A DNA stretch of 59,712 bases, counting the filler, from Dugesia japonica (Eukaryota), in the NCBI GenBank assembly GCA_001938525.1. It is 6 parts of 6 records of this genome, joined end to end, with 100 filler letters (N's around TTAATTAATTAA, not from the genome) between each part and the next. Parts side by side here need not be neighbours in the genome. Positions count along the whole stretch, not along the records: positions 26,000 to 34,895 come from MQRL01605951.1; positions 34,996 to 43,377 come from MQRL01404764.1; 4 more parts are not named here. The stretch is one strand, 5' to 3'. The position numbers and the translations under genes are program-made. Under the pieces are notes generated by a model, which did no database searches, had not been told where the DNA came from, and saw nothing but the letters and a program-made list of their open reading frames with translations. Of the stretch, positions 2,940 through 35,076 are shown piece by piece; within the stretch, counting starts at the first letter, position 1; each line of letters starts with the position of its first letter.

Positions 2940-3170
2940 CATCGACAGTGTTAGATTACTTAACTTTGCGCAAAACTCACAATCTCATTTTACTCTACAT
3001 TTCAGAAAATTAAATGTCTAATCCTGATATTATTAAACTTTATAGTACTAATCAAGCTGGTGAAAAATTTTCGTACTTTGTAGAAAAATGGTTTTGATCT
3101 AGATGGTTGCAAACAATTAATCGATTGTCTATGTCTATTCTTAGACGTATTGAGGTTATTAGAATGGAAT
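2940..3170 (+). pseudogene. Polinton penton C-terminus plus start of the next small ORF
   Basis: LNFAQNSQSHFTLHFRKL then MSNPDIIKLYSTNQAG; the same junction occurs at 44880-45015. Confidence 0.65.
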
Positions 3171-25848: not shown

Positions 25849-26159
25849 TCCGACGATAAACCAAAAGTCTTAGATTTTCTAAAAACATTTGGAATTACTN
25901 NNNNNNNNNNNNNNNNNNNNNNNNNNNNNNNNNNNNNNNNNNNTTAATTAATTAANNNNNNNNNNNNNNNNNNNNNNNNNNNNNNNNNNNNNNNNNNNNA
26001 AAAGTAGAACTTACTAAAAAATTACAAAGCCAAAATTATACAGATTTAACTTCCTTTATTAAAGAGATTATTGATACAATAAAAATTTATTTTGCTTTTG
26101 CTAGAAGAATATGCTTCAATTTATTGGGTAAAACCAAATACAATAAAGATCCTTACCAA

Positions 26160-26395
26160 ACAATGATCTTATTATTAATATTGAAAATGATGACAATGAG
26201 NGTTTTCTGTTTTCAATATTAGCTCATTTAAATATAGTAAAAAATACTACAAAACAAAATAGTTACTCAAATTACCAAAATGAATTAATATTAAACGTTG
26301 CATTTCCAGTAAAGATTGATCAGATTAAAATCTTTGAAAAGAGTAATAATTTCCTTGAAAATGTATTTGAAGTTGAATATATTGACTACTGAAAA
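26160..26395 (+). pseudogene. Polinton protein-primed DNA polymerase B, N-terminal region fragment
   Basis: INIENDDNExFLFSILAHL...FPVKIDQIKIFEK. Confidence 0.6.
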
Positions 26396-26439
26396 ATTTT
26401 TTGTTTATTCTATTTATATTTCTCTACCAGTAGAGGAGT

Positions 26440-26730
26440 TGGTTGGAGTTATCCATTGTTCAATGAAGTTAGTAATTATCGTCAAGGAGACAAAAACTGG
26501 GATGATATCAGAAAAGTTACAGAAAAAGTATACAGGTTCTTAAAGAGGGAAAATTTTGCGGATGATACAAAATTAGAATGGGTTGGAACAATTGAAGCAT
26601 GGAGAATATAGTTTTTATAGAATGCCATTTGGCATCGCAGTGGCACCAGAGACATTTCAAGAGATGATGACAAAAGTGGTAGGCGAAATCAATGAAGCCA
26701 TGGTTTATCTTGGTGACATCCTGATATAAA
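26440..26730 (+). pseudogene. Gypsy reverse transcriptase fragment
   Basis: FYRMPFGIAVAPETFQEMM...MVYLGDILI. Confidence 0.8.
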
Positions 26731-27731
26731 TATATAGACGCATCTTTATTAAAAAGTTATTATTTTCAATATATTACAAAATGTAATTTGTTAAAGAAAT
26801 AATGAGAAACTTTTAGATACTTCGCTAACCGGAAGAAAANNNNNNNNNNNNNNNNNNNNNNNNNNNNNNNNNNNNNNNNCTGAACTAGATTTTGTTGAAA
26901 CAAAATAAGTAATTTTAGCTTCACACTTAAATGTTTTATAGGCACTTTTAATGCATCACTGTAAATTTATTAAATTTTTATTTTATTTATCAGCAAGTTT
27001 ATTTCAAATATTTCATTAACTAAGTTAAGTAAATTCAATCTTAACTAATTATTTCAAATTTATATTGTAATTTTAAAAATCATTAATTTTAAATCCATTT
27101 CAAATTTATATAAAAGTCGTTAAAAGAGATTAAATCGAGATAAATTAAGTTTACAATGTACTAAAAAATTAATTTCCACAAACGAAAAAAGATTTAGAGC
27201 CAACCAACTTTTTAATCCGAATATTTTTTAAATGCATTAAAGTGTGAATTTCTATTGAAAATCATTTGATATTTACTTAAATTTTTTCCAAGATATTAAA
27301 TTTCACTGTAAATTTATTTGCTGATTTATTTTGTAAAAAAAATTAAAGAGGTTAAGAACGAAGTTTAGATCAAATTGAATTAGTTTAATAAATGCTCGAT
27401 ATTATTATTTAAACCAAAACCATATTAAACAAAATTTATTTTTAATTAAAAATGGAAACACTACAAAATTCATTTTCAATGCGAATTTAAAATATAATTT
27501 TTTCAAAAGGAATAATAAAATTTAAGGAACGATTTTCATGTCCAGTTTTATTATTTAAATATTAATTTATTTTAAAAATAAATATTTTATAACATAATGA
27601 ATATACTAACTATATTATATAAATCTATTAAAAATAAGAATATCAATTATCTAAATTGTATCATTTTAATTTGCATTGTCTTTTAATAAAAATATTTGTT
27701 TGTATAATTAGAAAAGATATTATTTTGAAAA

Positions 27732-28887
27732 ATGATGAAAAACTGTTTAATTTGTAAATATGAGTCTAATGACTTATTATCACATTGTAAAACTGAATGG
27801 CACACATACAATTTGAGACGTGGAACTTCTGGCTTGAATTCTTTATCATATGAAGAATTTAAGGTCAAACAAGCGGATTTAATTTTGAAAAACACAGTTA
27901 ATATTCCAGTTGGTTTTGCAATGTTTATTTCTTATTTCATAATATATTTCTTTAATTTAGAAAGAATACTATTGCTGTAAAAAAGTTTTTAAATGTGTAA
28001 ATACTTATGAGAATCATTTAAAGTCCAAAAAACATATTGAACAATCAAAAATAATAAACGATTCGAAGCAAAGTAATGAAATAGAAGAAATTCAGGAAAT
28101 TGTTGAAAATGAAATAATGGAAGACGATCAAAGTCAGTTAGAAGAACATATAGAAGAACCCCTAACAGTTTTAGATTGCTTATTTTGCAATTTATCTTTT
28201 AAAACTATAGAAAAAAATTTAAATCATATGTACCAGAATCATAATTTTAATTTACCTTTTCCTCAATGTGTTACAGATTTAGAAGGTCTTATGGAGTATT
28301 TGGTGTGTTTAATAGACGAATACCATGTTTGCTTGCAATGTAACAAACAATTCGATGAACGCAGAAGTGTTAGGAGTCACATGGACCACATGAATCATAT
28401 GAGACTTTATTTCCACCTCGAATCAAATGGAGATGATTTGTGCGATTTCTACTCGAATTTGCCTTCACCAGTTGTCAATTTAAATGCGTTATCTGTGAGT
28501 TTTGTTTTGGTTTTTATCTGTCTGTCAAATAAATTCGTTCGTAAATCTCTGCAAACAAAATATTAATTTGATATTTGCTAGGATAACTTGGAGATTGAAG
28601 CAGTTCTGCCGAATGGCAAGAAGGTCGGAAACAGAAGCATGAACGTTTATTTCAAGCAAAACCTTACTGGATTATTGTCTAATCCCAACAAATTATCGAT
28701 TACCAGTGGTCCGGATAAAGCAAGAATGAGTCTGATCGCATCAGGAAGATATAGCCAACTGGTGACGGCGTCCAAGATCACTCCAAAGGAAAAGAAATAC
28801 AAAACATTGGAAGCCAGATATGTTCAGTTGAGAAGTAGCAGATTTAGCAACTTTCAGCAGCATTTCCGAGCTCAGATTTTGATGTAG
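27732..28887 (+). CDS. ZNF622: ZNF622/Rei1 cytoplasmic 60S maturation factor, 3 exons (27732-27908, 27961-28494, 28582-28887), 338 aa
   Basis: HCKTEWHTYNLRR, YENHLKSKKH, CLFC...HMYQNHNF, CLQC...VRSHM, LPNGKKVGNRS, C-terminal HFRAQ; GT-AG phase-0 introns of 52 and 87 nt keep the frame. Confidence 0.92.
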
Positions 28888-29052
28888 ATTGAGAAATAAC
28901 GCAACAACGGTTTAATTATNCAATATCAATAATACACGATTCCGATCGATTCGTTCTGTTTTCATTCTTCCGTCCCGCCGTTGCGACGACTGGATTAATT
29001 GATTGGTTATTATCATTCATTATTATCATTATTATTCATGTGTTTATAATTT

Positions 29053-29498
29053 ACTGTTGATTATTTGATTGGTTGTTTATTTGATTGGTTGATTGTGGAG
29101 TAAGTATAATCACGCCCCCGTTGTAATCGTACATTTTAGACTCCCGTGACGGACTTCTTGTTCCTTCTTCCTGTTCTTTCTTCTTGTTCCTCTTTTCCCT
29201 TTTTTTCCTCTTCTTCCTTCTTTTTGTTCCTCCGCGCGTGACGGTGGGTACGTTCAAATAAACTGTTCTACCCAACCCGGATTATAATTTGCTGTTAATT
29301 AGTTGATTATTTGATTGGTTCATTGTGGAGTCAGTATAATCACGCCCCCGTTGTAATCGTACATTTTAGACTCACGTGACGGACTTCTTGTTCCTCTTGT
29401 TCCTTCTTCTTGTTCCTCTTGTTATTTCTATTTGTTCTTTCTTGTTCCTCCGCGCGTGACGGTGGGTACGTACAAATAAACTGTTCTATCCAACCAGG
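29053..29498 (+). repeat. Tandem ~240-bp direct repeat with LTR-like features
   Basis: gtataatcacgcccccgttgtaatcgtac...cgcgcgtgacggtgggtacg...aataaactgttcta occurs twice. Confidence 0.8.
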
Positions 29499-30059
29499 TT
29501 TGAGGAATTCAGGTTAGCCCAACAAGTGTTCCCCCTTACTACATTGTCGCTCTATGTTGCTGGTGCTGATCAGTGAGAAATGTATATTATTATCGAGTAA
29601 CTCTAGTGAAACAAGTTCCAAATAATTGGTACCATTGAATAAGATCCCCGTTGTGAGTGTGGAACAAGCTAAAGGAGACAGAACAAATGGTGAATCGATA
29701 ATGACATAATAATAGAAAAAGGTCAACCTCACTTATTGAGATGTGGATTACATTGGAGTTTAAGAGGTTTCGCTTAATGGTGGATTTGAATAATAATTCG
29801 CAGAGTAAAGACTCACACATTGCTCCAAGAGTTGAGGTGGGCAAGCGGGGCTTATTGAAAAATTTTCATTGTAAAAATGAAATTCTTTACCAATAAGTTC
29901 AGTAGTTATTCAATATTTTTGACCATTGTTTCGTTTCCGATTTTTTTTATCGAAACCCAATTGGGGAATTATAATTAAATTTATTTATATATTGATTAAT
30001 GAGGGTAAACCTAACAACAATGTAGTTTATAATAAATACAATCAAGTTAAACAAATTTA

Positions 30060-30370
30060 ATTTGAAAAAGTCAATTCCTGACGAAGGCAAAGTCGAAATT
30101 TCGAATCAATCTCTGGAAACAAAAATAAACTTTTGATCGAAGCTTTTTTATTTTAAATTTAATTTAAACCAAATTAAAACTATCCAATAAAATTCAAACC
30201 ATTTTGTAGATTTTTCTAATTTGCATGAAATCAATCAAAAAGTTTAATTCTCGAAGAAGACAATAACTNCCTAAAAAGAANTAAAAACAGCATTTTGATC
30301 GAAGCTTTTAATTTAACGAAACATCCAATGCGATCAATAATTAATTGTACAACATTTATTCTTGTAATTG
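30060..30370 (+). mobile_element. Tandem Penelope pseudo-LTRs with a minimal hammerhead motif at 30074-30106
   Basis: ATTC-CTGACGA-aggcaaagtc-GAAA-tt-TC-GAAT; ttttgatcgaagcttt occurs twice. Confidence 0.7.
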
Positions 30371-30378
30371 TGAAACTA

Positions 30379-30600
30379 TTACTCTCTTGTTTCGATTTTT
30401 TTCAAATTCAATTTCCATAAATTCGTTGTTATGCTTTCGTAACATTGATTAATTACGATTAATTGATAAGATAATAGTTTCACTTTACCCGGTTCTTCCT
30501 TGAGATATTCCATAAAGACGTTTAATAATATAGAGAATTTAAACCAGTAGATTTTATTCGGGTCCACTTTTAGAATCACTGGTTTAGCAGATGTCACCAA
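30379..30600 (-). pseudogene. Possible LTR retrotransposon PBS and gag start
   Basis: TGGTGACATC PBS-like sequence leading into VILKVDPNKIYWFKF. Confidence 0.35.
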
Positions 30601-31569
30601 GTTTAATTATTTTTAGTTTTAAAATAGTTTTCAGAAACCGTTGCCATGCACATTTTTGTTGCTATAGGAGCAGAGTCTTACCATACTACTCATAACTGAA
30701 AACTAAATAGGAATATAACTTTACTTTGGTTCTCAGAAAAAGCAGTGGCGCACTGAGCCACTTTGAAATTGGCATTCAAATTTCTAAACCAATATTTATT
30801 GTATGTTGATAAAATTAGTACCATTAGACTCGGAATAAAAAGCTACTTATACATTGCCCATAGAAATTATAGTGAAAAATTCTTTGTTGAGAAAATAATA
30901 TAAAATTAATAATAAATTATAATTTCTAAAATATTTTCAACTCAGAATCTAAAAATCTATATCAGGCCTGTCAAACCTTTTTTTTTAATGATTGACTTTA
31001 AATTTAACTCAACCTCAAGATCTACTCATATAAAGATTTAGATCTTTGNTTAGTTTAGTTCCATTTTTAAATAAAAATTTAACAAAAAATTAATTTAATA
31101 ATTAATTAATTAATAAAATTGTTGGGGTGAAAAGGAAATAAGGCCAAAAAGCCACATCAGCAAAGAAGAACGGCAGGACCATTATATTTACTAATAATGA
31201 AATGAAAAAGGTAAAACAGGAAAGTAACCCTTAGAAAAGAATAAAATAAAATTGAAGATAGATACGAAAAACCAGGGGACATGAAACTAACATACATCAA
31301 TTGGGACATAAAAGGAATTACAAATCAATATATCAGGAGGAAATAAAATTATTAAATAAAATATTTAATTATGAAAAAAATATCAATTAATTAAAGATAG
31401 AAAATAAATAAAATTAAACCAGAAANNNNNNNNNNNNNNNNNNNNNNNNNNNNNNNNNNNNNNNNNNNNNNNNNNNNNNNNNNNNNNNNNNNNNNNNNNN
31501 NNNNNNNNNNNNNNNNNNNNNNNNNNNNNNNNNNNNNNNNNNNNNNNNNNNNNNNNNNNNNNNNGCCGG

Positions 31570-32033
31570 ACCAATAGGATGCCTAAAAAGAAACATAAAA
31601 CAAAGACACAATTATCATGTGCCATTCTAAAAATAACTACCGATCAGAACCCCAGAATTCTTAGAAGATTAGCACCAGATCCAATAAAATTCAAATAATT
31701 TAATTTTAAAAATAACCAACTAACAGGAATACGGTCGGGATGCAACTAAAGTCATATATAAGCCGCAACAAACTTGGGTGAAATACAACAAAAAAATTCT
31801 AAAATATTGTCTATCAAGGACCTCATAATAATCTGGAAAACTCACTCATAACGTGCCCAACTCTAGTCAAATTATCTCACAAATCGTTTCAACTAACAGA
31901 AAGGAAAACCTTAGTTCAACTAAATCCGGATAGAAATTCAGTAATCTATTCGTGAAAATATTGATTCAGGCAGAAGAAGAAATTGTACGAATATCATCCC
32001 GTTGCAGAAACTTGAAAAATATTTAAAGTAAAA
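31570..32033 (+). promoter_or_regulatory. Cassette promoter and leader exon
   Basis: CCAAT boxes, GTCGGGATGCA (31734), TATATAA (31755), CCGTTGCAGAA then donor GT at 32028; all have positional equivalents in copies 2 and 3. Confidence 0.6.
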
Positions 32034-33432
32034 AATTATGTTTATATTTGATATATAAATTTCTTTTTAATGTCTAACTATGTTATGTTCAGTGTATGAA
32101 TAAAAATTTTTTAAAAAGTTAAACTAATTTTTTTTTCATTACAAAACAAAAATTATTAATTACACTTTTAGTTCCATTTCGCATATGAATAAAAGAAATG
32201 TTATTGTATACCATAGAAAATGAATGGAAAATTATCAATAATAAATTATATGGTTACCTGAGTTGATGGGTTGGAAATATTTAATGCTTAATTCCATTAA
32301 TTGCTGACAAATAAACCTCGCACTGCTATCGGATTCATTGATAGCACAATATATCTTTTAAGTCACTATTTTCTGCGATGTTTTCTCAATTAAATCCTCC
32401 ATTTCGAAAATAGTTCCAAAGTTGATCCAGAAGGTCATCAATAAACTCCTGAATTAAATTTGAAAAATCCATGAGGTGATTGTAGAACGGGTAGCACCAA
32501 ATCGGATGATGACGGATTATATATAAAGAGACGGACATTAAATTGAGTTTTCCTGCACACAAATTTATAATCTGACTCACACATCTGCTAACACACGGCA
32601 TCACATATGCAGGAACACGTCANNNNNNNNNNNNNNNNNNNNNNNNNNNNNNNNNNNNNNNNNNTTTTTTCTTGATATTCTGACAGATATGGGTTGCCAT
32701 AGAAATAACGCTGAAACCTATTATTAAAAAATTGCATCATAATTCTTATCGAGATTATGACTTTATGGTTATTTTTATTAAATAACACTATGCGTACAGT
32801 TATTACTAAAGTTAATATTACGGCTGATGTTATTATTCTTGCTATTATCAATAAGATGAGTGCTATCATTATTATTATAATTATGATTATCGTTATTATT
32901 ATCATTATTATTATGGTCATGACGATAATTATTATTGTCATTATTATTAGTAATATTGTTATTAAAATTATTAGGGTAATAATATGATTATCATTATTAT
33001 TATCGTTATGCTTAGCTCGACTATTATTCTTAAGGACAGAATCATCATTATCATTAGTATTACCATTGTTATTATTATCGTTGGTTTATTATTATTATCG
33101 TTATCATTAAGACGAGTATAACTGTTGTCTTATTGCGGCATTTATGAGGTTAATACCCTTAATACTATTGTCATTATTCTGGTTATCATTAGTATTATCC
33201 TTACGAGTAAGACAATGAGTAATATTCGCCTTATTAATAAGCTTCATTAATAGGTATAATGTTAACATTAATTTTACCATGAATGAACTTCTGAATGTCA
33301 CTAACGAGATCTTGGGTGTTGAAACTAATGGCACCGATAGCAATGATAGACGTTCTTATTGCATACCCTCAGATAGTCTGAGAGAATCTCAATTCTAAGT
33401 ACAACCTTTAGTTATTTATCATTTTTTAGCTA

Positions 33433-33618
33433 ATGCCGGCCAAACTGCGCCATACCTTACAGTGGATCAGACGCCAGCGATGGGCCACTAGATTGAAACA
33501 GTTAATAGCCCATCTATTGACTCATGGCAAAATAGAACACCCTGACGAAACCAATCTCCAATGTTTCGCCGAGATGTTCACCCTAGGGAAACAAGTTGAC
33601 TTAGACGAAGAGCGATAA
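33433..33618 (+). CDS. Cassette ORF A, 61-aa orphan (EHPDET motif)
   Basis: Intact ORF; homologs at 35501-35673 and 57693-57875; acceptor ttttag 3 nt before the ATG. Confidence 0.8.
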   Translation: MPAKLRHTLQWIRRQRWATRLKQLIAHLLTHGKIEHPDETNLQCFAEMFTLGKQVDLDEER

Positions 33619-33784
33619 ATCGAATGGCATAGTGTTTACTCTATGTAGAACGAATATTACCCCTTTTACTTCAATTTTAGACTAGTTGTGTGTGCGTATC
33701 ATTCTTTGTTTTTGTTACGTTTTTTTACATAAACCTATTTAAATTGTCGTTATGGTAATAATTATTATAAAATTTTCAATAGGA

Positions 33785-34144
33785 ATGGACTCGGTTTGGG
33801 AACAAATAATAGACCGCAGAACTCGCCGGGTGGTTTTTAGACACCACCATAACCCGTATAATAGAGATGCCGGTATTCTGGTGGATAAGACCAATTTACC
33901 TCCGATAAAGGCGACAGTGGCTCGCATTCAGAACTTCGGCGAAAGGGTACGCTTTCAACAATGGAACAGACCGGTACGCACCGGTACGCACCCATGCCAC
34001 GGCCTTTAATTATCAACCTCCAGCCCCCCTCTAGTAGTGCAGGCTTTTATATCCAATTTACTCTGGGGTGTGAGAGAACCAACGGGGGTTAATTATTTCG
34101 AAAACACCAATCCTAATATCGACAATAATACTGATCCACAATAA
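33785..34144 (+). pseudogene. Cassette ORF B, ~118-aa orphan, frameshifted by a 10-nt duplication
   Basis: MDSVWEQIIDRRTRR...AGILVD..NLPP...VQAFISNLLWGVR; acceptor caatag 2 nt before the ATG. Confidence 0.8.
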
Positions 34145-34336
34145 ACCCTTTCTTTGTGTACTTAGAACTAAAAATAAATAAATGTTTCATCTTCTGTTAA
34201 TCCACTTTATATCCACATACATTTGTTTGAAGAAAATTCTAATATATATTAATTCAAGGATGTATTATTAAGTACTGTATGTCTCATTGTTCATAATTAT
34301 AATATTTCAGTGCATTCCTCCTTGAATAAATTGCAG

Positions 34337-34670
34337 GCCCCGAATAAAAAACTACGAGAAACCAGTGAGGACCTCGATCTCACTTGGGATTTATATCGGC
34401 TGGCAAAACGTCGACGGGAGGCCGAAATAGACGTCGCCAACAGTAAGATATCCCGCTACAAGAAGAAATGCAGCTGCTTTCAAAAAGGAGACCGAGGCCT
34501 CTCACTTGCAGAAGCGAACCTAGAAGAAACAGGTTGAGTCCTTTGCGGAAGTTATCTGGTCCAGCCATGACTGAGAAAATAAACTGGTTAACGATGTTTT
34601 ACTTATCCGGGAAAGAATACCTCTCGAACTACTGATGATCAAAAAGAGCACCCAAAACCCTCGGACTTAA
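34337..34670 (+). pseudogene. Cassette ORF C, basic coiled-coil orphan
   Basis: ttgcag|APNKKLRETSEDLDLTWDLYRLAKRR...ERIPL. Confidence 0.75.
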
Positions 34671-35076
34671 CCGTTTCAGCTTTTATAAATAAATCTATTA
34701 TTCAATCATTTTCTTTTGATAAATTTTTTTCTTTTATCCTAAAGTTTTACTTAAGCTTAGCTGTTTAATTGCTTTATTATTAATTTAATTTCCTTAAGTG
34801 TCTCGCATCATTTTCCTAATAGTCTCCGCCGGTGCCATCGCATCATGCACCGTCTGTTACTGGAACGACACTTAAAGTGTAAAACAGACCGGGTTNNNNN
34901 NNNNNNNNNNNNNNNNNNNNNNNNNNNNNNNNNNNNNNNTTAATTAATTAANNNNNNNNNNNNNNNNNNNNNNNNNNNNNNNNNNNNNNNNNNNNTTATT
35001 ACTTTTTTATTGATTTGCCACAAAAAAATTCCTTGAATCAATCTGTCTATTTAATCTACCTCACAACAGCAAAAAT

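What the first reader, a model, noticed from the sequence alone, without database searches (positions are those of the whole stretch)
31120..34700. Unannotated multicopy three-ORF cassette: one promoter/leader and a splice acceptor in front of every small orphan ORF
Seen: three strongly diverged, collinear copies on three separate contigs (31.1-34.7 kb +, 35.1-37.9 kb -, 56.7-59.7 kb -). Each has 2-3 CCAAT boxes, a G(T/C)CG(G/A)NTG(C/T)A box, a TATA-like box and, about 210-340 nt later, CC(G/C)T(T/G)GCAGAA followed by a GT donor (GTAAAA, GTAAGT, GTAAAA). Next come ORF A (~60 aa, KQLIAH...EHPDETxLxxFxEM...DLD), ORF B (~118 aa, RxTRR...NLPP...AxIxxxLWxVR) and ORF C (KKLRETSEDxDLTWDLYRLAKRR; absent from truncated copy 2). 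Each ORF is a GC-richer island preceded by an AG acceptor: 3-4 nt before the ATG of A, 2 nt before the ATG of B (copies 1 and 3), and exactly at the first codon of C. I recognise no transposase, RT or capsid in it. Inference: a polycistronic unit resolved by alternative splicing of a shared leader, architecturally like adenovirus E4. It may be the accessory arm of an endogenous DNA virus/Polinton or an undescribed mobile gene cassette.
Basis: partly seen in the sequence, partly recalled or inferred. Interest (0 to 1): 0.9.

Follow-up and report, generated by a model that had tools for sequence, protein, structure and literature searches.

The report
Orphan small-ORF locus with untranslated leader
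This stretch looks like an unannotated, lineage-restricted gene locus (a promoter, a start-codon-free leader exon, a long intron and three small GC-richer coding patches), with nothing linking it to a virus or a known mobile element; one patch is broken, and the claim that it is multicopy could not be checked here.

Summary
The local anatomy is real. There is a TATA-like box at 31755, a 298-nt ATG-free leader, a GT at 32028, and AG dinucleotides just before ORF A, ORF B and exon C. The three patches are 47-49% GC, against 25-27% GC in the spacers. Taken one at a time, most signals are weak: CCAAT is at chance, each ORF's openness is unremarkable, the AG before B is mediocre, and one quoted box fits only with an extra N. 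ORF B carries one in-frame stop. The C frame has no ATG, so a leader-to-C splice cannot produce the conserved C peptide. C must therefore be a downstream coding exon. A, B and C match nothing in Pfam, PHROGs or PDB. A and C match nothing in the 5.8-billion-protein search, and C matches nothing in the 1.84-billion-representative search. No viral or transposon hallmark lies in the piece, and an ordinary REI1/ZNF622-type host gene sits 2.7 kb upstream. The most likely reading is a lineage-specific cellular transcription unit with a shared non-coding first exon, an arrangement already known in Drosophila, and this copy is partly decayed. The three-copy claim, the source organism and the splicing could not be tested. 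The promoter and leader are joined to the ORFs only across an assembly gap. Interest is low to moderate.

The parts
31565..31761 (+). Promoter-like region: CCAAT at 31571 and 31681, GTCGGGATGCA at 31734-31744, TATA-like TATATAA at 31755-31761. It starts at the right edge of assembly gap 31426-31564.
   Evidence: The CCAAT count is at chance and the box is weakly significant. The role is inferred from position, not shown.
31762..32027 (+). Putative non-coding leader (first exon); the transcription start is not mapped. It is ATG-free from 31740 to 32038, holds the unique 11-mer CCGTTGCAGAA at 31999-32009, and ends at the GT of GTAAAA (32028).
   Evidence: 0 ATG against 3.8 expected, P(0)=0.003 in dinucleotide shuffles, and the second-longest ATG-free stretch on the + strand. 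Also.
32028..33429 (+). Putative leader intron of about 1.4 kb; its length is approximate because it holds assembly gap 32623-32664. It contains a GC-richer island at 32290-32622, an ATT/ATC-rich minisatellite at 32718-33276, and a strong-looking acceptor (T-rich tract plus AG at 33428-33429).
   Evidence: Splicing is inferred; there are no transcript data.
33433..33618 (+). ORF A: 61 aa, intact, basic (pI 9.1), GC 0.47, with its ATG 3 nt after the acceptor. No AATAAA lies between its stop and ORF B.
   Evidence: No family or relative was found. AlphaFold2 from the single sequence gave two helices at pLDDT 63.
33785..34144 (+). ORF B: one reading frame of 119 codons plus the terminal stop, broken once by an in-frame stop in this copy. 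GC is 0.47. Its ATG lies 2 nt after an unremarkable AG, and AATAAA overlaps its terminal stop (34140-34145).
   Evidence: The two pieces were searched apart and hit no family or structure. The fold of the first piece was unconfident at pLDDT 44.
34337..34537 (+). Exon C: a frame open from the first base after AG 34335-34336 (phase 0) to the stop at 34535-34537. It is 66 aa, highly charged, has no ATG in frame, and has GC 0.49.
   Evidence: No relative was found in 1.84 billion representatives or 5.8 billion clustered proteins, nor in Pfam, PHROGs or PDB.
34538..34693 (+). Probable 3' untranslated region, still GC-richer (0.39), ending in AATAAA at 34688-34693.

Best explanation
This is a lineage-restricted (orphan) cellular transcription unit of an AT-rich eukaryote, not a virus. 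A TATA-type promoter near 31755 would drive a non-coding first exon of roughly 250 nt that has been kept free of ATG. That exon would be spliced from the GT at 32028, across an intron of about 1.4 kb, to an acceptor 3 nt before the ATG of ORF A. ORFs A and B lie on the same primary transcript, because there is no poly(A) signal between them. B could be reached in three ways: on a bicistronic mRNA, through an alternative acceptor, or from its own weak promoter. Transcripts could end after B (AATAAA at its stop) or go on to exon C (AATAAA at 34688). Exon C has no start codon, so it must be a downstream coding exon joined in frame to an upstream ATG-bearing exon; in-phase GT sites exist inside ORF B. 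The products would be small, basic, hydrophilic proteins without known domains. This copy is partly decayed, with one stop in B. What is shown: the sequence signals, the ATG-free leader, the GC islands and the lack of homologues. What is inferred: transcription, every splice, translation and function.
For: The leader is ATG-free for 298 nt, P(0)=0.003. The acceptor before A ranks 3rd of 54. Three GC islands of 0.47-0.49 sit in spacers of 0.25-0.27, each with an open or nearly open frame on the same strand. No + strand AATAAA lies between 32445 and 34140, and then one lies at B's stop and one 150 nt after C's stop. The C frame lacks an ATG and starts in phase 0 right at an AG that follows a pyrimidine tract. 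An ordinary three-exon REI1/ZNF622-type host gene lies 2.7 kb upstream on the same strand, also with GC-richer exons in AT-rich surroundings. No viral or transposon domain was found and there are no terminal repeats. Cellular precedent exists: shared promoters and 5' non-coding exons, and di- to tetracistronic loci enriched for small proteins, in D. melanogaster (PMC4528330).
Against: There are no transcript or protein data. No relative was found, so there is no conservation evidence of my own. Each ORF's openness is individually at chance. B is broken. The promoter/leader and the ORFs are joined only across assembly gap 32623-32664, and composition changes across that gap. A family reported on several short contigs is also what a repeat would look like. 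Codon-position composition is only weakly gene-like, and for C it is atypical.
Confidence: 0.4

Rival explanations
1. The cassette is a fragment of an uncharacterised repeat or non-autonomous mobile element. It would be multicopy because it was amplified as a repeat, and the small ORFs would be relics or accessory genes of an element whose enzyme genes lie elsewhere.
For: B is broken. The GC content of the ORFs (0.47-0.49) is clearly above that of the neighbouring host gene's exons (0.29-0.41). A decayed RT fragment and several low-complexity repeats show that the region is repeat-rich.
Against: Within the piece there are no terminal inverted or direct repeats, and no transposase, RT or integrase lies next to the ORFs. 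AT-rich spacers with preserved GC islands, and an ATG-free leader, point to long-term constraint rather than neutral decay. Boundaries could not be tested, because the piece ends 200 nt after the last poly(A) signal.
Confidence: 0.25
2. The locus has no protein-coding function. It would be a non-coding RNA locus or a dead pseudogene, and the frames would be chance ORFs in GC-richer patches.
For: About 0.3 of shuffles give some frame as open as each ORF. The minus strand of the same islands has ORFs of 59-62 aa. No homologues were found. Folds are low-confidence. B is broken and C has no ATG.
Against: Three islands each have their best frame on the same strand. ATGs lie directly behind AGs for A and B. 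The leader is ATG-free, a property that matters only if something downstream is translated.
Confidence: 0.2
3. The locus is an operon resolved by spliced-leader trans-splicing. The AG just before each cistron would be a trans-splice acceptor, as in nematodes, flatworms, rotifers, tunicates or cnidarians.
For: The AG lies 2-3 nt before the ATGs of A and B. The spacers of 164-192 nt resemble intercistronic regions. AATAAA lies right after B and before the C acceptor. From general knowledge, trans-splice sites usually lie close to the start codon.
Against: The source organism is unknown, so the presence of spliced-leader RNA is untested. There is no AATAAA between A and B. C has no ATG. A cis donor with a unique conserved-looking word and an ATG-free exon lie upstream. 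The acceptors here are mostly TAG, not the nematode type.
Confidence: 0.07
4. This is the reader's reading: the accessory arm of an endogenous DNA virus or Polinton, expressed like adenovirus E4 by alternative splicing of one leader onto each ORF.
For: The support is architectural only: a leader, a donor, and AGs before the ORFs.
Against: No capsid, polymerase, integrase, ATPase, protease or other viral family was found in any ORF I scanned in the piece. A and C have no relative among billions of proteins, viral ones included. A host gene lies 2.7 kb upstream. C cannot be translated from a leader-to-C mRNA. The same architecture occurs in cellular genes.
Confidence: 0.04

Closest known systems
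Drosophila loci that share a promoter and 5' non-coding exon, and di-/tri-/tetracistronic loci (FlyBase 'rule-benders', PMC4528330)
   Same: They have one promoter and a non-coding first exon, with separate small coding regions downstream. Stop-to-start spacers run from -34 to 319 nt (here 166 and about 190 nt), small proteins are over-represented, and some monocistronic forms arise by alternative splicing.
   Different: Those loci are supported by cDNA, RNA-seq and cross-species conservation, and here there is none. The third unit here has no start codon of its own. The proteins have no known relatives.
Cholinergic gene locus (VAChT nested in the first intron of ChAT, with shared 5' exon)
   Same: It works the same way: a common non-coding exon is spliced alternatively to two different coding units. 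This rests on general knowledge; the papers listed describe the locus.
   Different: The proteins are unrelated. That locus has two large conserved genes, not three small orphan ORFs, and it is single-copy.
Adenovirus E4 and other viral units in which one leader is spliced to several small ORFs
   Same: Only the proposed logic is shared: a leader donor and acceptors in front of small ORFs.
   Different: No viral protein family matches and there are no terminal repeats. A host gene lies nearby. One 'ORF' lacks a start codon. No E4 protein came back as a hit in Pfam, the PDB or the large protein searches.
Spliced-leader trans-spliced operons
   Same: Acceptors lie directly before the start codons and the spacers are short.
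   Different: A cis leader exon with its own donor lies upstream. There is no poly(A) signal between A and B. The organism is unknown.

Membership tests
Polinton/Maverick or other endogenous DNA virus | Hallmark genes: protein-primed DNA polymerase B, retroviral-type integrase, packaging ATPase, maturation protease, major and minor capsid proteins | tested here: not met
   Pfam and PHROGs scans of A, B (two pieces), C and 20 other ORFs of the piece gave no such family. Sequence beyond the piece's edge at 34895 could not be seen.
Polinton/Maverick or other endogenous DNA virus | Terminal inverted repeats and target-site duplication | tested here: not met
   There are no convincing inverted repeats within 26000-34895; the best pair is 43 nt at 72%. 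The result is inconclusive for termini outside the piece.
Adenovirus E4-type unit | Homology of the small proteins to E4 ORF families | tested here: not met
   No Pfam or PDB hit was found, and none in the large protein searches.
Adenovirus E4-type unit | One leader alternatively spliced onto each ORF, shown by transcripts | not testable with these tools
   There are no transcript data. At sequence level it fits A, is weak for B and fails for C, which has no ATG.
Cellular shared-leader / polycistronic locus | Single promoter plus non-coding first exon with a donor | tested here: inconclusive
   The TATA-like box, the 298-nt ATG-free stretch (P 0.003) and the GTAAAA donor are present. However, the leader is linked to the ORFs only across gap 32623-32664.
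Cellular shared-leader / polycistronic locus | Separate, non-overlapping coding regions, each with its own start codon | tested here: inconclusive
   This is met for A and B. It is not met for C, which has no ATG in frame.
Spliced-leader trans-spliced operon | Host lineage with SL RNA, and SL-bearing reads at each acceptor | not testable with these tools
   The organism was not identified and there are no reads.
Spliced-leader trans-spliced operon | Poly(A) signal of the upstream cistron within the intercistronic spacer | tested here: inconclusive
   AATAAA is absent between A and B and present between B and C. Variant signals were not assessed.
Known transposon superfamilies (DNA, LTR, non-LTR) | Transposase, RT or integrase domain inside or adjoining the cassette | tested here: not met
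   The only such domain is a decayed RVT_1 fragment at 26583-26726, which lies 5 kb upstream and is separated from the cassette by the REI1-type host gene.
RlmD/RumA-type m5U methyltransferase relic (for ORF B) | Match to the family profile beyond a short local identity | tested here: not met
   There is an 18/35 identity to the C-terminus of two Xanthomonadales-type proteins, seeded by one exact 8-mer in scans of more than 600 Gb. Pfam shows no methyltransferase signal at E up to 1. I take this as chance.

The most novel reading that the evidence does not exclude
A new family of small, basic, domain-less proteins is expressed from a three-unit locus. One ATG-free leader is alternatively spliced to successive coding units, and the whole unit (promoter, leader, intron and ORFs) has been copied around the genome as an undescribed mobile or duplicating gene cassette.
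Probability: 0.08. Interest if true: 0.6.

Novelty: new member of a known kind. Interest (0 to 1): 0.25.

Why it matters
If the locus is transcribed and translated, it would add one more lineage-specific family of small proteins, and one more example of several coding units sharing a non-coding first exon. That is useful for annotating this genome, because standard pipelines miss such small ORFs. It would not change any general picture. It would become more interesting only if the whole unit proved to be mobile, or if the copies were linked to viral genes. Nothing in this piece points that way.

Tried and rejected
Homology searches: Pfam and PHROGs scans of A, B (two pieces), C and other frames gave nothing. 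PDB sequence searches of A, B and C gave nothing. The word-indexed search of 5.8 billion proteins found no candidate for A or C. The exhaustive search of 1.84 billion representatives with C gave 0 hits.

Exact look-ups: none of ten ORFs from the window is in the collection. The source genome's raw ORFs are therefore not represented, and the blanks say little about paralogues in the same genome.

Collection scans: scans of metagenome contigs and prokaryote genomes with the part of B before its break each gave one bacterial methyltransferase locus. I rejected both as chance.

Structure: prediction of A (pLDDT 63) and of the first part of B (pLDDT 44) was too weak for a fold search, so I ran none.

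Organism: the third protein search went to the neighbouring REI1-type exon. It gave one 59%-identical relative from an unnamed sequencing run. A paper search for that run found nothing. The PDB hits are equally distant from yeast and human.

Other negatives: Rfam and tRNA scans found nothing. Self-comparison found no second copy and no termini. A, B and C are not similar to one another.

Steps left out: the joined model (an upstream coding exon plus exon C) was not built, searched or folded. No tool predicted that intron and no relatives were available to share it, and the operators ask that the joined step be omitted.

2. In my reasoning I noted the coordinate of the stop inside ORF B. My script printed a plain three-frame translation in which stops are visible. 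My queries for B's two pieces necessarily end and start at the break. The place is not repeated in the notes or in this report.
Full report
Scope. I worked only on places 26000-34895. The rest of the window is N plus a short linker.

What the piece is. It is AT-rich eukaryotic DNA: 30% GC overall, with intergenic stretches of 16-25% GC. It contains a decayed Ty3/gypsy-type reverse-transcriptase fragment at 26583-26726 (RVT_1, E 3e-4). It also contains an ordinary three-exon gene for a REI1/REH1/ZNF622-type 60S-biogenesis zinc-finger protein at 27732-28887 on the + strand (zf-C2H2_2, E 2e-22; PDB hits at 52-59 bits; a 59%-identical relative with the same exon layout). After that come a 230-240-nt tandem duplication at 29044-29501, about 2 kb of AT-rich sequence without recognisable genes, and then the finding. 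I could not name the organism.

Gaps first. Gap 31426-31564 lies immediately upstream of the promoter-like region, and both flanks share a strong A>T skew (+0.43 and +0.35). Gap 32623-32664 lies inside the proposed leader intron, and composition differs across it (GC 0.38 against 0.27, and the skew changes sign). No long plus-strand reading frame abuts either gap. The only long frame that crosses one is a low-complexity isoleucine-rich artefact on the minus strand. The flanks do not overlap. ORFs A-C are therefore untouched by the gaps. The physical link between promoter/leader and ORFs, however, depends on the scaffold join at the second gap, and I could not verify it.

The observation. The quoted signals are at the stated places:
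- CCAAT at 31571 and 31681.
- GTCGGGATGCA at 31734-31744.
- TATATAA at 31755-31761.
- CCGTTGCAGAA at 31999-32009.
- GTAAAA from 32028.
- AG 3 nt before the ATG of ORF A (33433-33618, 61 aa).
- AG 2 nt before the ATG of ORF B (33785).
- AG directly before the first codon of exon C (34337-34537).

The three ORFs are GC-richer islands (0.47, 0.47, 0.49) between spacers of 0.27 and 0.25.

How much exceeds chance is mixed:
- CCAAT is at chance in the piece: 23 found, 23.8 expected.
- The GYCGR...TGYA box fits only with two N, and one such match appears in 15 of 100 shuffles.
- The 11-mer at the leader's end is unique, with none expected. That pattern was derived from the copies themselves.
- The openness of each ORF is individually unremarkable. 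In the given frame, P is 0.03-0.07. About 0.3 of shuffles have some frame among the six at least as open. The same islands carry minus-strand ORFs of 59-62 aa.
- By a crude pyrimidine-tract measure among the 54 AGs between 33300 and 34400, the acceptor before A ranks 3rd, the one before C 11th and the one before B only 24th.

Two features are stronger. From 31740 to 32038 there is no ATG on the + strand. That makes 298 nt without an ATG, the second-longest such stretch in the piece. For the 265 nt between the TATA-like box and the donor, 3.8 ATGs are expected, and only 0.3% of dinucleotide shuffles have none. That is the signature of a leader that must be scanned without initiation. The three islands also all have their best frame on the same strand.

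Points that change the picture. ORF B is broken in this copy by one in-frame stop; there is no frameshift between its conserved ends. The C frame contains no ATG at all, and the first ATG of that exon opens a different 55-aa frame. A leader-to-C mRNA therefore could not produce the conserved C peptide. C must be a downstream coding exon joined in frame to an exon that carries a start codon. Its acceptor is phase 0, and GT sites in the same phase exist inside ORF B. No tool predicts such an intron and I had no relatives to share it, so I did not build, search or fold a joined model.

There is no + strand AATAAA between 32445 and 34140. A thus has no canonical poly(A) signal of its own and would share a transcript with B. 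AATAAA overlaps B's terminal stop (34140-34145), recurs at 34173 and 34177, and lies at 34688-34693 after C. The A-B spacer contains three ATGs, so simple reinitiation or leaky scanning to B is not favoured.

Homology. A, B (its two pieces searched apart) and C hit no Pfam or PHROGs family and no PDB chain. A and C have no candidate in the word-indexed search of 5.8 billion clustered proteins. C has no hit at E 0.001 or better among 1.84 billion representatives read exhaustively. These blanks have limits. None of ten raw ORFs of the window, including the host gene's exons, is in the collection. Paralogues in the same genome would therefore not have been seen unless they were annotated, and short queries have little power in so large a library.

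Scans of metagenome contigs and of prokaryote genomes with the part of B before its break each returned one GC-rich bacterial locus. Both hit the same place, the C-terminus of an RlmD/RumA-type methyltransferase, with 18 of 35 residues identical. The match was seeded by one exact 8-residue word in more than 600 Gb. It counts as one independent event and has no Pfam support, so I take it as chance.

AlphaFold2 from single sequences gave two helices at pLDDT 63 for A and no confident fold for the first part of B (pLDDT 44). A fold search on such models would be meaningless, so I ran none. The predicted products are hydrophilic and mostly basic (pI 9.0-11.4; the C-terminal part of B is acidic) and are not similar to one another.

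Mobile or viral? Within the piece there are no terminal inverted or long direct repeats around the cassette and no second copy. There is no transposase, integrase, polymerase, capsid, ATPase or protease domain in any ORF I scanned. A host gene lies 2.7 kb upstream. The piece ends 200 nt after the last poly(A) signal, so anything further downstream is unknown.

Interpretation. The best-supported reading (confidence about 0.4) is an unannotated, lineage-restricted cellular transcription unit. It would consist of a TATA promoter, an ATG-free non-coding first exon, an intron of about 1.4 kb ending 3 nt before ORF A, and further small coding segments B and C downstream. There would be alternative ends after B or after C, and C would be an in-frame downstream exon rather than a cistron of its own. 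The pattern of GC-rich islands in AT-rich spacers is also seen in the neighbouring host gene. It is what coding constraint produces under AT-biased mutation.

Such arrangements are known in cellular genomes. [quoted passage not shown] Small proteins are over-represented among them, the spacers run from -34 to 319 nt, and some monocistronic forms arise by alternative splicing (PMC4528330). From general knowledge, the cholinergic locus is the classic case of one non-coding exon spliced to two coding units.

The rivals are:
- A fragment of an uncharacterised repeat or non-autonomous element (0.25).
- A non-coding or dead locus with chance ORFs (0.2).
- A spliced-leader trans-spliced operon (0.07; it depends on the unknown organism).

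Verdict. In kind, this is a new member of a known type of locus. Interest is low to moderate.

Steps left out and slips. I did not build or search the joined exon model. Second, the place of B's stop appeared in my reasoning and is visible in a plain translation printed; it is not repeated here.

Noticed in passing
window 27732-28887 (+): This is an ordinary host gene for a REI1/REH1/ZNF622-type C2H2 60S-subunit biogenesis factor. It has three exons and two short introns (about 59 and 87 nt). Its closest retrievable relative is 59% identical, comes from an unnamed sequencing run and has the same exon layout.
   Followed up: partly
window 26583-26726 (+): A decayed Ty3/gypsy-type reverse-transcriptase fragment (RVT_1, E 3e-4) lies next to assembly gap 26840-26879.
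   Followed up: partly
window 29044-29501: Two tandem copies of about 230-240 nt (84% identical) lie just downstream of the host gene. They carry runs of TGATTGG (inverted CCAAT), a CT-rich microsatellite and a CG-rich word. This is the longest ATG-free stretch of the + strand (516 nt). TGATTGG runs also occur in an intron of the related locus L001. No explanation was found.
   Followed up: partly
window 32290-32622: A GC-richer island (0.36-0.38) lies inside the putative leader intron and abuts gap 32623-32664. It has a palindromic TATA-like word near 32520 and a short minus-strand ORF. No family was hit. It could be an alternative exon or promoter, or part of something else joined in by scaffolding.
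   Followed up: partly
window 32718-33276: An ATT/ATC-rich minisatellite (period about 12/36) lies inside the putative intron. It creates long low-complexity isoleucine-rich pseudo-ORFs on both strands.
   Followed up: yes
window 31100-32030: A strong A-over-T strand skew (+0.25 to +0.44) runs across the region before the promoter, the promoter and the leader, on both sides of gap 31426-31564.
   Followed up: no
window 30182-30204 and 31679-31701: A 23-nt CCAAT-containing word recurs at 91% identity 1.5 kb upstream of its copy in the promoter-like region. A 32-nt word is also duplicated, at 30116 and 30278.
   Followed up: no
window 34820-34895: Another GC-richer patch begins at the 3' edge of the piece and is cut off by the edge.
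   Followed up: no
window 33785-33890 vs L002 about 3001-3110 and L003 501-635: The N-terminal part of ORF B shares 18 of 35 residues with the C-terminus of an RlmD-type methyltransferase of Xanthomonadales-like bacteria. The match was seeded by one exact 8-mer and has no family-level support, so I take it as chance.
   Followed up: yes
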